Shown here: piece after piece, positions 8,389-22,625 of the stretch
Layout: each line of letters opens with the position of its first letter
Position numbering within the stretch: the stretch's first letter is position 1
NCBI GenBank assembly: GCA_943704425.1
Contig: CALSCP010002682.1
Span: 1-38,151, forward strand
Length of the DNA: 38,151 nucleotides
Origin: Ministeria vibrans ATCC 50519
Lineage: Eukaryota > Protista > Filasterea
Direction of reading: 5' to 3'
Notes under the pieces: generated by a model
Seen by the model: the letters and a program-made list of their open reading frames with translations, nothing else
Databases searched by the model: none
What the model was told of the DNA's origin: nothing
Program-made: the position numbers and the translations under genes

Positions 8389-11300
8389 ATGCTCACAGCC
8401 ATTGCGCTCACGCTGAGCCTTCTTGTCCACGTCGCCAACGCCGTGCCGGCCTTTGCTCTTGGCGACTACTCAACAGATTCCAACCCGGCACAGCACCACT
8501 CCCGTCGTGCTGTGTGCGCCAACGGCAAGTACCCCGTCTACAACAGCTGCTGCTTCACTCAGTGCTCCTGTGGCATAACCGTGTGTGGCTGTGCTACCAT
8601 GAAGACTTCCTCTTGGGGTGGCATCCAATGCGGTTCAAGTTGCGGCAACGAATGTGTCTCCTGCAACGTTTGTACAGATTGCCCCGCTGGCAAGTACGGC
8701 AACAACGACGAATGTCACGACTGTGCCGCCAACAAGTACACCGACCAGAAGTCTCAAACAAGCTGCAAGAATTGCAACGCTGGCTACTACTCAAACACCG
8801 GCGCAACTTTTTGCGCCGAGGTCAACGAGTGCCTTTCCAACCCCTGTCAGAACGGCGGCGTCTGCGACAACCAAATTGACTCCTATGATTGCTCGTGTCC
8901 CGCTGGCTACACCGGCACCAACTGTCAGACCAACATCGACGAGTGTGCCTCGAGCCCGTGCCAGCATGGTGCCACGTGCTACGATGGTGTCAACGGTTAC
9001 ACGTGCACGTGTGTGCCTGGCTACACCGGCACCAACTGTCAGACCAACATTGACGAGTGTGCCTCCAACCCGTGCCAGAACGGCGCCACCTGCGTCGACT
9101 TGGTCAACGGCTACCTCTGCAACTGCGAGCTCGGCTACGACGGGACCCTGTGCAACAACAACATCAATGAGTGCGCCTCAAGTCCCTGTCAGAATGGCGC
9201 ATCCTGTGTTGACGGTGTTAACGGCTACACTTGCACTTGCGTGCCCGGTTACAATGGGATCCTCTGCAGCAACAACATCAACGAGTGTGCTTCTGTCCCG
9301 TGTCAAAATGGCGCCACCTGCGTCGACGTGGTCAACGGCTACACCTGCTCGTGTGTACCTGGCTACACCGGCACCCTTTGCGAGAGTGACATGGACGAGT
9401 GCGCGTCGAGCCCCTGTCAGAACGGCGCCGTCTGCACACAGTCCATTGCTTACTACACGTGCGCCTGTGTCGCCGGTTACGCCGGTACCAACTGCGAGAC
9501 CAACGTAAACGAGTGCGCCTCCAACCCGTGTCACAACGACGCGACATGCGTCGACGGCATCAACGGCTACACCTGCTCGTGCGCCGTCGGCTGGTTTGGT
9601 TTGCTGTGCGACGTTGAGGTCGACGAGTGTGGCTCAGCCCCCTGTGTCAATGGCGCCGAGTGCCTCGACACCCTCGCCGGCTTTCTCTGCACATGCGTCA
9701 CAGGCTACACCGGAATCCAGTGCGAAACAAACATCGACGAGTGCGCCTCAAGTCCGTGCCAGAATTTCGCCGCCTGTGTCGACGCCGTCAACGCCTACTC
9801 ATGCATCTGTAGGGCGGGCTACGCGGGCATCCATTGTGAAACGGACATTGACGAGTGCGTCTCGAACCCATGCCAGAACTCGGGTACGTGTGTGGACGCC
9901 GTCAATGGCTACTCGTGCACCTGTCCCGTTGACTACTACGGCACCGAGTGCGCCGAATTCGACGACTGTTACGCTGAGCCGTGCCTGAACGGCGCCTCTT
10001 GCGCTGAGAGTGGCACCGCATACGAGTGCACGTGTGCCGCTGGCTACGACGGCGACCAGTGCCAGGTGAACATTGACGAGTGTGCGTCGTCACCGTGCAC
10101 CAACGGCGGTGTGTGCACCGACCAGGTTGACGCATACGCCTGCTCCTGTCCCCAGGGCTTCCTTGGCATCCACTGCGAGACCGACTCTGACGAGTGCGCC
10201 TCGACACCCTGTCAAAATGGCGCTCCCTGCAGCAATCTTCCGGGGGCCTTTTTTTGTGATTGCACCACTGGCTGGTACGGCGAATTCTGCGAGGCAGACA
10301 CCAACGAGTGTGCGTCGTCGCCATGCACCAATGGCGCCACATGCGTGGATTTGCAGGGAACCTACGAGTGTCGCTGTGCCAGCGGCTACAGAGGAGTACA
10401 ATGCGAAACTGACATTGACGAGTGCAGCTCATCGCCGTGCTCCAATGGCGCCAGCTGCGCCGATCAAGTTGATGGCTTCGTGTGCACGTGCGCTTCCGGC
10501 TTTGCAGGTGTCGTCTGTGAGACCGAGCTAAACGAATGTGATTCGTCGCCGTGCTCAAACGGGGCCAACTGCACGGACGCCCTCGACGGCTTTGTGTGCA
10601 CCTGTGCGTCGGGCTTTACGGGCGTTGTGTGCGAGTCGAATGTGGACGAGTGTGCCTCGTCGCCATGCTCCAATGGTGCCTCGTGCAACGATCAAGTCGA
10701 TGGCTTTGTGTGCGTCTGTGCTTCGGGCTTTACTGGCAACGTATGCGAGACCAACGTCGATGAGTGCTTGTCGTCGCCCTGCTCGAATGGCGCCAACTGT
10801 ACCGACGCAGTCGATGGTTTTTCATGTGTGTGTCCCTCTGGGTTCACTGGCGTCGTGTGCGAGTCCAATGTGGACGAGTGCCATTCGTCACCCTGCTCCA
10901 ATGGCGCAACGTGCCTCAACGAACTCGACTATTTCACGTGTCTCTGTGCCTCGGGATTCACCGACTCGCGGTGTCAGACCAACGTGGACGAGTGTGAGTC
11001 GGCGCCGTGCTCCAATGGCGCAACCTGTCTCGACGGGGTTGACGGGTTCAGCTGTGTGTGCGCCTCGGGCTTTGTGGGCATTGCGTGTGAGTCTGAAGTA
11101 GACGAGTGCGCTTCGTCGCCTTGCTCGAATGGTGCCAACTGCACTGACGCTGTCGATGGCTTTGTGTGCATGTGCGCCTCGGGCTTTACGGGAGTTGTGT
11201 GCGAGTCGAATGTGGACGAGTGTGCTTCGTCGCCGTGCACCAATGGTGCGGTGTGCTCAAACAATCTCGACGCCTACACGTGCACCTGTCCCTCAGGATT

Positions 11301-21900: not shown

Positions 21901-22625
21901 TCCAGCGTGGCTCTGTACCCGTGGCAAAACAGAAGCCGTTGGAGCCCAAGCGCAGCGGTGCGTGGGTGTCCGACGGCGCATTTGCCTCACAGGCATCTGT
22001 TGTGATGCAAATGGACGACGACGACGACGACTTGCGCGCTGTCGACGAAATGGAAATGGAGCAGATGAACCAGCACGCAGCGGGCTACTCAGAGGTGGAG
22101 ATGGCGCAGATGCACACGATGCTGTCGACCGACGAGCTCGACATGACCATTGTTCCTGCCGCCGTCATGCTGCAGGATCACGAACTGCGCGCTTACGTGA
22201 CGCCCGAGGAGCACGAAACCGTCGAAGACAGCCATTTCGACGATGGCTCTATCTTCGATGCCTTCTCCGACTGCGGCAGCTCAGACGATCTGTTGGGGGG
22301 CGACCGTTCAGTACCCATGTCGCCCATTGCGGTCACTCGCATGCGCATGGCCATCTCACGCGGCTCTGTTGGACAGTCCAACGAGAGCCTTTCGCCCAGT
22401 CCAAGTCCCGCCACCTCTTCTCCTGCGCTCTTCTCACCGATTCCCCCGCGTCAAATGTCGCGTCTCATGGCCCCTTCCAACGCCAACGTGTGGCAATCGC
22501 CTGCGTCGCTTATCTCGTCGGCCGATGCCGACGGCGACGACCGCTCCCTTGACGACGGCATGCTTCTGCGCGACCACGGCGACCACTCCGCCGGCCTCCA
22601 GCGCAACATGTCTGTCCGCCTCTAG
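15981..22625 (+). CDS. Adhesion GPCR paralogue 2, ~2180 aa, exons 15981-16346 and 16449-22625: same architecture with 19 EGF repeats
   Basis: Exon 1 encodes the signal peptide MSCSLMLVVAGVLLASSPARA and a Cys-rich tip homologous to paralogue 1 (CPAGK.G.N..C.DCAAGK). The phase-0 intron GTACGT...GTGCAG (16347-16448) joins it to YADVAG..., in frame with the 16383-22625 ORF. The GPS (TVCRTLHLTNFAMLA) is identical and the 7TM near-identical to paralogue 1. Confidence 0.92.

What the first reader, a model, noticed from the sequence alone, without database searches (positions are those of the whole stretch)
8389..22625. Tandem giant adhesion GPCRs combining a Notch-like EGF array, an EGFR/IR-type L-domain solenoid and GAIN-7TM
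Seen: two head-to-tail genes, each SP - Cys-rich tip - 24 or 19 cbEGF repeats - a ~370-400 aa solenoid - GAIN/GPS - 7TM. The solenoid opens with C...ITTQDRLNR..GC......LTVSG, repeats GxLxIxxNxxL, and closes with LTDNADLC / LTHNADLC. Established: that opening and closing pattern resembles receptor L domains of EGFR/insulin receptors, and animal EGF-TM7 (ADGRE) receptors carry far fewer EGFs and no L domain. Inference: this is a receptor architecture I do not recognise from animal aGPCR families. It joins modules animals use separately in Notch, RTKs and aGPCRs, and could act as a long-reach contact or mechanosensor in a unicellular holozoan.
Basis: partly seen in the sequence, partly recalled or inferred. 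Interest (0 to 1): 0.85.

Follow-up and report, generated by a model that had tools for sequence, protein, structure and literature searches.

The report
Giant EGF, L-domain adhesion GPCR pair
Two neighbouring, transcribed genes of an unnamed marine protist encode very long adhesion-type G-protein-coupled receptors (19 or 24 calcium-binding EGF repeats, a long L-domain-type solenoid, a GAIN domain, seven membrane helices); each part was already known in such receptors, so this is a new combination and a large local family, not a new kind of receptor.

Summary
Pfam finds 24 and 19 EGF repeats, Recep_L_domain on the solenoid (44.9 bits), GPS (about 1e-12) and 7tm_2 (1e-31). A profile and an AlphaFold model confirm a full GAIN domain, and the solenoid models with high confidence (pLDDT 89.5).

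Corrections:
- Gene 2 has two introns, confirmed by RNA contigs.
- Six N in gene 1 hide 108 bases.

- Receptor L domain plus GPS plus 7TM was reported in Capsaspora adhesion GPCRs in 2012. Those two Capsaspora receptors form a well-supported 7TM clade with the window's genes.
- An animal (Lingula) adhesion GPCR carries 27 EGFs.
- The solenoid has L-domain caps at both ends but about 17 turns. Its closest sequence relatives are Bacteroidota surface proteins, not receptor tyrosine kinases.

New here:
- The three-way combination. I found it in no public protein.
- Its expansion. At least 15 of at least 46 7tm_2 loci in this 30-Mb genome carry the solenoid just upstream, and at least 11 of these also carry EGFs.

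Function as a self-cleaving contact or force sensor is inferred, not shown. Earlier reports of this scan on other DNA of this genome describe different adhesion GPCRs (ZU5 type), not this family.

The parts
8389..15174 (+). Gene 1, single open frame (2261 codons as assembled, about 2295 once the gap is filled)
   Evidence: ORF list, translation. Contigs of run X7 cover 11600-15262; X7 is listed only as guessed RNA, and I read it as RNA because it shows spliced joints and no depth between the genes.
8389..8445 (+). Gene 1 signal peptide (hydrophobic N-terminus)
   Evidence: Hydropathy peak at residues 1-19. The cleavage site is inferred.
8515..8829 (+). Gene 1 Cys-rich tip with CxxC-type repeats
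   Evidence: No Pfam hit. Weak PDB hit to an ephrin-receptor-like Cys-rich domain, E 0.0048.
8830..11544 (+). Gene 1 array of 24 calcium-binding EGF repeats, 38-residue period
   Evidence: Pfam EGF, 24 stretches. Motif count: 24/24 calcium-binding consensus, 23/24 O-glucose site, 13/24 O-fucose site.
11548..12738 (+). Gene 1 L-domain-type solenoid (interrupted by the assembly gap)
   Evidence: 66% and 74% identical to the gene 2 solenoid. Recep_L_domain 20.3 bits on the whole protein, just under the cut-off.
12068..12073 (.). Six N that stand for 108 bases (36 codons, in frame)
   Evidence: N run. Contigs of runs X7 and X18 carry 108 letters between the flanks. The paralogue has 108 bases here.
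12739..13554 (+). Gene 1 GAIN domain ending in the GPS, with His-Leu|Thr at 13546-13554
   Evidence: GPS 4.4e-12. Profile against PDB GAIN domains. Motif.
13618..14349 (+). Gene 1 seven-helix domain (7tm_2)
   Evidence: Pfam 9.5e-31. Genome scan 113 bits. Hydropathy peaks.
14350..15171 (+). Gene 1 cytoplasmic tail (acidic, no known domain)
   Evidence: No Pfam hit.
15445..15574 (+). Gene 2 exon 1 (5' leader and ATG at 15567). The true 5' end is unknown
   Evidence: RNA contigs of X17, X7 and X18 start at or near 15433-15457 and are joined to 15992.
15575..15991 (+). Gene 2 intron 1 (GT..AG, 417 bases)
   Evidence: Joint in X7 and X17.
15992..16346 (+). Gene 2 exon 2: signal peptide and first part of the Cys-rich tip
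   Evidence: Translation. RNA contigs.
16347..16448 (+). Gene 2 intron 2 (GT..AG, 102 bases)
   Evidence: Joint in X7, X17 and X18.
16449..22625 (+). Gene 2 exon 3 (2058 codons and stop)
   Evidence: ORF, translation.
16542..18686 (+). Gene 2 array of 19 EGF repeats
   Evidence: Pfam, 19 stretches. Motif count.
18690..19979 (+). Gene 2 L-domain-type solenoid, about 430 residues and about 17 turns
   Evidence: Recep_L_domain 44.9 bits and LRR_EndoS 28.1 bits. Profile hits insulin-receptor and EGFR L domains. Model pLDDT 89.5. Fold matches.
19980..20786 (+). Gene 2 GAIN domain, with His-Leu|Thr at 20778-20786
   Evidence: GPS 6.9e-13. ADGRG6 2.9e-22. Model and BAI3 match.
20850..21710 (+). Gene 2 seven-helix domain, with a third intracellular loop about 45 residues longer than in gene 1
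   Evidence: Pfam 6.9e-31. Translations. Hydropathy.
21711..22622 (+). Gene 2 cytoplasmic tail
   Evidence: No significant Pfam hit.

Best explanation
These are two intact, transcribed tandem paralogues of a lineage-expanded adhesion GPCR family.

Each protein reads: signal peptide, small Cys-rich tip, a stiff rod of 24 or 19 calcium-binding EGF repeats, one long solenoid capped like a receptor L domain, a GAIN domain with an intact His-Leu|Thr site and a hydrophobic tethered-agonist stretch, a class B2 seven-helix domain, and a long tail.

The solenoid-GAIN-7TM core is shared by descent with the two Receptor-L-domain adhesion GPCRs of Capsaspora.

Inferred mechanism: the ectodomain binds a partner on another cell, prey or a surface, through the tip, the EGFs or the solenoid face. 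Pulling on it, or rearranging it, uncovers the tethered agonist next to the GAIN domain, which switches on the seven-helix domain and heterotrimeric G proteins.

Shown here: domain order, folds, motifs, transcription and splicing, and family membership.

Inferred only: self-cleavage, the ligand, G-protein coupling and a force-sensing role.
For: - Pfam domains.
- GAIN by profile and by model.
- Solenoid model pLDDT 89.5, with L-domain hits by profile: IRR, IR and IGF1R L2 at 3.6e-7 to 1e-5, EGFR L1 at 5e-4.
- RNA contigs with both gene 2 introns removed, and contigs along gene 1.
- At least 13 further loci in the same genome repeat the order (EGF)-solenoid-GAIN(-7TM).
- The junction motif between the last EGF and the solenoid is conserved in paralogues.
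- In the 7TM tree the window genes, own paralogues and Capsaspora CAOG_00812 and CAOG_00386 form one clade, SH-aLRT 98.
- One HMMER stretch runs collinearly from the solenoid end through GAIN to 7TM in both Capsaspora proteins. They carry Recep_L_domain + GPS + 7tm_2.
- hhalign of the solenoid profile against CAOG_00812 gives E 4.5e-5 over 412 columns.
- Three G-alpha loci are present in the genome.
- A choanoflagellate aGPCR with EGFs (Cupidon) is cleaved at its GAIN domain and regulates adhesion (bioRxiv 10.64898/2026.06.27.734982).
Against: - Both window genes have lost the second GPS disulphide (two of four cysteines), which their paralogues keep. Cleavage could be impaired.
- Pfam's own GAIN model did not hit; only GPS did.
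- No ligand, localisation or coupling data exist.
- All runs laid were assembled contigs, so expression level and transcript ends are unknown.
- The 5' end of gene 1 was not checked against RNA.
- hhalign probability for the Capsaspora solenoid match is only 69%.
Confidence: 0.75

Rival explanations
1. The solenoid module was exchanged horizontally between marine Bacteroidota (surface proteins exported by the type IX secretion system, T9SS) and this protist lineage. It was then fixed next to the GAIN domain and amplified. On this reading it is not a vertically inherited relative of the receptor-tyrosine-kinase L domains.
For: - The best solenoid matches in 5.8 billion proteins are bacterial proteins with Recep_L_domain plus Por_Secre_tail, E down to 5.8e-42.
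- BLASTP to P0025 gives 33% identity over 410 residues, including the N-terminal cap.
- All 13 further top hits carry Recep_L_domain and 6 carry the T9SS tail.
- This is as close as the protist's own paralogues (28-35%) and much closer than Capsaspora or animal L domains.
Against: - Repeat proteins near an idealised consensus score high without close kinship.
- Capsaspora has a collinear L-domain-GAIN-7TM module, which favours an old eukaryotic presence.
- The direction of any transfer is unknown.
Confidence: 0.18
2. The solenoid is simply a leucine-rich-repeat ectodomain, as in ADGRA or LGR receptors, and the L-domain label is a naming accident.
For: - The best structural matches are long LRR proteins: Z 24 to LIC11098 and the RPP1 LRR, and Z 18-21 to LGR4, LGR5 and TSHR.
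- LRR_EndoS also hits.
Against: - The sequence profile hits only insulin-receptor and EGFR-family L domains in PDB, at both caps.
- Recep_L_domain scores above LRR_EndoS.
- No classical LRR Pfam family hit the window proteins.
- To my knowledge both families belong to one Pfam clan, so the difference is one of degree.
Confidence: 0.12
3. The two window receptors no longer self-cleave and act mainly as adhesion molecules or constitutive receptors, without tethered-agonist gating.
For: Both lack the Cys2-Cys4 pair of the GPS that nine paralogues keep. From my own knowledge, some animal aGPCRs are uncleaved yet functional.
Against: - His-Leu|Thr and the hydrophobic stretch after it are intact and identical in both genes.
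- The two missing cysteines were lost together, as expected for a tolerated loss of one disulphide.
Confidence: 0.12
4. Assembly or gene-model artefact: collapsed or chimeric paralogues, or unrelated genes fused by a read-through open frame.
For: - There is an N gap inside gene 1.
- Near-identical tracts (95.5-95.7%) lie between otherwise 78-83% identical genes.
- Some RNA contigs are chimeric between the paralogues (joint 11724 to 11891).
Against: - The frames stay open for 2261 and 2058 codons.
- The gap is filled in frame by 108 bases in independent runs.
- The same domain order recurs at more than 10 other loci.
Confidence: 0.03

Closest known systems
Capsaspora owczarzaki adhesion GPCRs CAOG_00812 and CAOG_00386 (probably the two 'RLD' receptors of Krishnan et al. 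2012, PMC3251606, which cites them by other accessions)
   Same: Receptor L domain followed by GAIN/GPS and 7tm_2, collinear in one HMMER alignment. Same 7TM clade, SH-aLRT 98. L-domain caps align.
   Different: No EGF repeats detected in the Capsaspora proteins. Only about 28-30% identity. In CAOG_00812 the solenoid region is longer and interrupted.
Lingula anatina XP_023930468.1 (annotated as a Notch homologue; by Pfam it is cadherin-FN3-27 EGF-GAIN-7tm_2)
   Same: A Notch-sized EGF array on a GAIN-7TM receptor.
   Different: No L-domain solenoid. Has cadherin and FN3 domains. Its 7TM lies in a different clade.
Cupidon, the Salpingoeca rosetta adhesion GPCR (bioRxiv 10.64898/2026.06.27.734982)
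   Same: A protist aGPCR with EGFs, GAIN with His-Leu|Thr, 7TM and a PDZ-type end. It is experimentally cleaved and regulates adhesion.
   Different: Five EGFs, plus ConA, TSP1 and HRM domains, and no L domain. It is specific to choanoflagellates.
L1/L2 domains of insulin receptor, IGF1R and EGFR/ErbB (PF01030)
   Same: The N-terminal cap (Cys ... Cys-x-x-Ile-x-Gly) and the C-terminal cap (Asn-x-x-Leu-Cys) match by profile, at 3.6e-7 to 1e-3.
   Different: From my own knowledge, animal L domains have about 5-6 turns, come in pairs separated by a furin-like Cys-rich domain, and sit on kinases. Here there is one unit of about 17 turns, no furin-like domain, and a GPCR.
Bacteroidota T9SS surface proteins with tandem Recep_L_domain/LRR_EndoS units (e.g. 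P0025, P0001, P0026)
   Same: Highest sequence similarity to the solenoid. Same caps and variable-length cap-to-cap units.
   Different: Bacterial secreted proteins with many tandem units and a Por_Secre_tail. No EGF array, GAIN or 7TM.
LRR-bearing GPCRs (LGR4/5, TSHR; ADGRA-like LRR-GPS-7tm_2 clusters)
   Same: A long solenoid ectodomain on a GPCR. Structural Z 18-21. An LRR_8+GPS+7tm_2 cluster was seen in the Atlas.
   Different: Different Pfam family. LGR and TSHR are rhodopsin-class receptors without GAIN.

Membership tests
Adhesion GPCR (class B2) | Seven-helix domain of the secretin/adhesion type (PF00002) | tested here: met
   9.5e-31 and 6.9e-31, over the cut-off.
Adhesion GPCR (class B2) | GAIN domain (helical subdomain A plus beta-sandwich B) directly before helix 1 | tested here: met
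   Profile against ADGRG6 2.9e-22 over positions 17-301. Model has 7 helices of four or more residues followed by strands. Foldseek BAI3 GAIN 3.6e-13, TM 0.69. Pfam's own GAIN model did not hit.
Adhesion GPCR (class B2) | GPS motif with the His-Leu|Thr/Ser cleavage consensus | tested here: met
   PF01825 at 6.9e-13 and 4.4e-12. His-Leu-Thr present in both genes.
Adhesion GPCR (class B2) | Four conserved GPS cysteines (two disulphides) | tested here: not met
   Both window genes keep only two. Nine paralogues keep four. This is not required for membership, but it bears on cleavage.
Adhesion GPCR (class B2) | Actual autoproteolysis and tethered-agonist activation | not testable with these tools
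   Only the sequence consensus (Thr-Asn-Phe-Ala-Met-Leu after the cut site) is seen.
Receptor L domain (PF01030) | HMM score above the gathering threshold (21.8 bits) | tested here: met
   Gene 2: 44.9 bits on the solenoid alone and 31.7 on the whole protein. Gene 1, which has the gap: 20.3 bits, just under.
Receptor L domain (PF01030) | L-domain caps at both ends, similar to solved L domains | tested here: met
   Profile positions 4-104 align to insulin-receptor and IGF1R L2. Positions 341-413 align to insulin-receptor L1 and positions 344-413 to ErbB4 L2, including the closing Leu-Cys.
Receptor L domain (PF01030) | Single-stranded beta-solenoid fold | tested here: met
   Model pLDDT 89.5 with short strands recurring about every 23 residues. 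Z 24 to LRR solenoids. Handedness was not examined.
Receptor L domain as in EGFR/insulin receptor | Compact unit of about 5-6 turns, paired with a furin-like Cys-rich domain | tested here: not met
   One cap-to-cap unit of about 430 residues and about 17 turns. No Furin-like hit.
Notch | LNR, NOD and ankyrin modules behind the EGF array | tested here: not met
   No such Pfam hits. Only the cbEGF array and its O-glycosylation consensus sites resemble Notch.
Filasterean Receptor-L-domain adhesion GPCRs | L domain adjacent to GAIN-7TM, and a common 7TM clade | tested here: met
   The tree used only the proteins found here, so sampling is limited.

The most novel reading that the evidence does not exclude
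The L-domain-capped solenoid next to the GAIN domain is a bacterial-type adhesin module, shared by horizontal transfer with marine Bacteroidota type IX secretion cargo. It was captured by an adhesion GPCR in a filasterean-like lineage and amplified into the dominant receptor family of this bacterivore. Such a family might sense prey or biofilm surfaces. This would also raise the question of whether animal receptor-tyrosine-kinase L domains descend from such a module.
Probability: 0.15. Interest if true: 0.65.

Novelty: new variant of a known kind. Interest (0 to 1): 0.38.

Why it matters
Multidomain adhesion GPCRs are thought to have arisen in the common ancestor of filastereans, choanoflagellates and animals.

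This locus shows that a Receptor-L-domain-GAIN-7TM core, so far reported only as a domain hit in two Capsaspora proteins, is a conserved module. In another marine protist it was combined with Notch-sized calcium-binding EGF rods. It was then amplified to about a third of that organism's adhesion-type receptors.

That gives a second juxta-GAIN module, beside HRM-GAIN-7TM, for reconstructing pre-animal receptor evolution. It also gives a set of natural length variants (EGF number, solenoid length) for testing how ectodomain reach and stiffness affect tethered-agonist signalling.

It does not overturn current views.

Tried and rejected
- **Word-indexed protein search**. It found no full-length relative and missed even the Capsaspora proteins, because too few words are shared.
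- **ESM Atlas**. It gave only generic aGPCR clusters, none with an L domain.
- **Foldseek on the whole solenoid**. Results were weak (TM 0.2-0.4), because long solenoids of different curvature align badly. VIA-align gave LRR matches only.
- **P0038**, a metagenome EGF-7TM protein in the same clade. It shows no solenoid by hhalign.
- **Second halves of nine paralogous loci.** So the upstream EGF status of four paralogues (C1962, C2192, C1494, C1832) is unknown.
- **Supplementary tables of the 2025 eLife catalogue.** They are not held. I could not check whether this exact architecture is listed there for Ministeria or Pigoraptor.
- **Naming the organism.** It could not be named. Run labels are coded. 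No protein above 35% identity to the searched solenoid-GAIN-7TM segment exists in the representative library. The Furry neighbour is 40-43% identical to animal Furry proteins.
- **** was a mistyped pattern and gave nothing useful.
- **Spliced protein of gene 2.** Its exons were read and searched separately by reference, so the joined step is left out.
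Full report
**What is there**

The window holds two long open frames on the + strand, 8389-15174 and 16383-22625. Coding parts have about 58% G+C, against about 47% in the window's first 8 kb.

Pfam on the translations gives:
- 24 and 19 EGF stretches;
- 7tm_2 at 9.5e-31 and 6.9e-31;
- Recep_L_domain at 20.3 bits (gene 1) and 31.7 bits (gene 2).

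On cut-out pieces:
- The gene 2 solenoid (window 18690-19980) scores 44.9 bits for Recep_L_domain in two stretches, and 28.1 bits for LRR_EndoS.
- The stretch before helix 1 scores 6.9e-13 (gene 2) and 4.4e-12 (gene 1) for GPS.

A motif count shows a strict 38-residue EGF period. The calcium-binding consensus is present before 24/24 and 15/19 repeats. The O-glucose consensus is present in 23/24 and 18/19, and the O-fucose consensus in 13/24 and 11/19.

**Gene models**

The long frame of gene 2 opens with a pyrimidine tract and has no ATG.

I laid contigs of four public runs on 11600-16700. They show:
- a 102-base GT..AG intron at 16347-16448, removed in three runs (X7, X17, X18);
- a 417-base GT..AG intron at 15575-15991, removed in two runs.

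The ATG at 15567 in a mini-exon, or the in-frame ATG at 15996, therefore starts a typical signal peptide.

The same runs show that the six N at 12068-12073 of gene 1 replace 108 bases. That is exactly the length present in the paralogue, so gene 1 stays in frame and gains 34 residues.

Run X7 is listed only as guessed RNA. It has no depth between the genes and shows spliced joints, so it behaves as RNA, and it covers gene 1 from 11600 to about 15262. All runs are assembled contigs, so nothing can be said about expression level or transcript ends.

**The GAIN domain**

Pfam's GAIN model is silent. A profile of ten paralogous segments (A2) matches solved GAIN domains over their whole length:
- ADGRG6 at 2.9e-22;
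- ADGRL3 at 1e-19;
- latrophilin-1 (4dlq) at 2.4e-11.

The AlphaFold model (pLDDT 71, pTM 0.71) has a helical subdomain followed by a beta-sandwich. It matches the BAI3, ADGRB2, CELSR1, ADGRL3 and ADGRG6 GAIN structures, with a best hit of 3.6e-13 and TM 0.69.

Both window genes keep His-Leu|Thr and a hydrophobic stretch after it. Both lack the second and fourth GPS cysteines, which nine paralogues keep.

**The solenoid**

The model built on an alignment of 14 segments (A1) is confident (pLDDT 89.5, pTM 0.87). It is a continuous solenoid of about 17 turns.

By sequence, a profile of A1 hits 118 PDB sequences. All of the 60 listed are L domains of the insulin-receptor or EGFR families:
- The opening 100 positions match L2 of IRR, IR and IGF1R (3.6e-7 to about 3e-5).
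- The closing 70 positions match ErbB4 L2 and insulin-receptor L1, up to the Leu-Cys.

By shape, the whole solenoid aligns best with long LRR proteins (Z 24) and with the LGR and TSHR ectodomains (Z 18-21). This is expected for a unit three times the length of an animal L domain. No furin-like domain is present.

I read it as one extended, L-domain-capped solenoid, not as an EGFR-style L1-CR-L2 set.

**Relatives**

A full HMMER scan of 1.84 billion representatives with the solenoid-GAIN-7TM part found no protein above 35% identity.

Three hits carry Recep_L_domain + GPS + 7tm_2 in one collinear alignment:
- a metagenome fragment (P0024);
- Capsaspora CAOG_00812;
- Capsaspora CAOG_00386.

Krishnan et al. 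2012 already named the Receptor L domain (RLD) as a new adhesion-GPCR N-terminal domain in two Capsaspora sequences (PMC3251606). The 2025 eLife catalogue lists EGF, Furin-like and RLD among filasterean aGPCR ectodomains (PMC12716839). The eLife text does not spell out RLD.

In a 7TM tree of 85 sequences, one clade with SH-aLRT 98 holds the window genes, three paralogues, both Capsaspora receptors and four metagenome proteins.

The solenoid profile aligns with CAOG_00812 cap to cap, at E 4.5e-5 and probability 69%. No EGF was found in the Capsaspora proteins.

Large EGF arrays on aGPCRs are not unique either. A Lingula protein annotated as Notch is cadherin-FN3-27 EGF-GAIN-7tm_2.

**Family in this genome**

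The assembly has 29.7 Mb in 2860 contigs. It holds at least 46 loci with 7tm_2.

The solenoid query finds 14 further contigs. In 13 of the 15 regions I could fetch, the order (EGF)-solenoid-GAIN(-7TM) recurs in long open frames.

Combining the coordinates:
- At least 15 loci have a solenoid one to two kilobases upstream of a 7tm_2 match on the same strand.
- At least 11 of these also carry EGFs.

The Ser/Thr-Asp-Cys-Arg junction between the last EGF and the solenoid is shared by several paralogues. This points to duplication of the whole module.

The genome also has three G-alpha loci, two GT90 (POGLUT-type) loci and two O-FucT loci. These are family-level hits only.

**Bacterial look-alikes**

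The strongest solenoid matches anywhere are bacterial surface proteins with many Recep_L_domain/LRR_EndoS units. They often carry a type IX secretion tail.

BLASTP to one of them gives 33% identity over 410 residues, and the N-terminal cap is aligned. That is as close as the protist's own paralogues.

This may reflect a shared near-consensus repeat, or horizontal exchange. I could not build the deciding tree.

**Tandem pair**

The two genes are 78-83% identical in DNA over most of their length, with tracts of 95.5-95.7% at 11891-12422. This fits gene conversion.

The 7TM domains are 86% identical. Gene 2 has a third intracellular loop that is longer by about 45 residues and rich in Ser, Thr and Arg.

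**Mechanism**

By analogy with solved and tested aGPCRs, and with Cupidon of S. rosetta, I propose the following. A rod of calcium-stiffened EGFs carries a Cys-rich tip away from the membrane. From my own knowledge of cbEGF pairs, I estimate the rod at roughly 50-70 nm. The solenoid next to the GAIN domain either binds a partner or transmits load. Displacement of the N-terminal fragment then exposes the tethered agonist. None of these steps was tested.

**Verdict**

The architecture is a new variant of a known kind, the filasterean Receptor-L-domain adhesion GPCRs, and it is expanded here. Interest is moderate.

Noticed in passing
window 27603-37757 (- strand): A Furry / MOR2-PAG1 homologue in two adjoining open frames (MOR2-PAG1_N 1.4e-110, MOR2-PAG1_C 4.3e-39), with an N run at 30436-30464. 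Its best public matches are animal Furry proteins at 40-43% identity.
   Followed up: partly
window 25492-26622 (+), N run 26264-26338: A small open frame with a teneurin-type EGF hit (7.4e-6), interrupted by a 75-N gap.
   Followed up: no
window 8228-8270 and 8367: An (AC)n microsatellite lies just upstream of gene 1, and an out-of-frame ATG lies 22 bases before its start codon. The 5' structure of gene 1 was not checked against RNA.
   Followed up: no
window 21240-21590 (gene 2, third intracellular loop): Gene 2 has an insertion of about 45 residues, rich in Ser, Thr and Arg, in the loop between helices 5 and 6 relative to gene 1. It is a possible phosphorylation or coupling difference between the paralogues.
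   Followed up: no
window 11724-11891: RNA and DNA contigs of three runs carry a same-length but diverged version of this stretch. These are probably assemblies that switch between the two paralogues at near-identical tracts.
   Followed up: no
L035 (G000 contig C981) and protein P0022: An ENA metagenome protein (708 aa, GPS + 7tm_2) is the close sister of the paralogue on contig C981 (branch lengths 0.25 and 0.15). Near relatives of this organism therefore occur in environmental data. The source organism's DNA also turns up in algae and seawater metagenome runs.
   Followed up: partly
proteins P0082 and P0023: Two public annotations look wrong. Lingula XP_023930468.1, named Notch homologue, is an adhesion GPCR with 27 EGFs. 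Strigamia T1IXT1 has two GPS and two 7tm_2 matches and is probably two fused gene models.
   Followed up: partly
proteins P0001, P0025, P0026 and alignment A3: Bacteroidota T9SS cargo proteins are built of variable-length cap-to-cap Receptor-L-domain units (up to 9 Pfam stretches and over 300 bits). I did not find this protein class described in the papers I read.
   Followed up: partly
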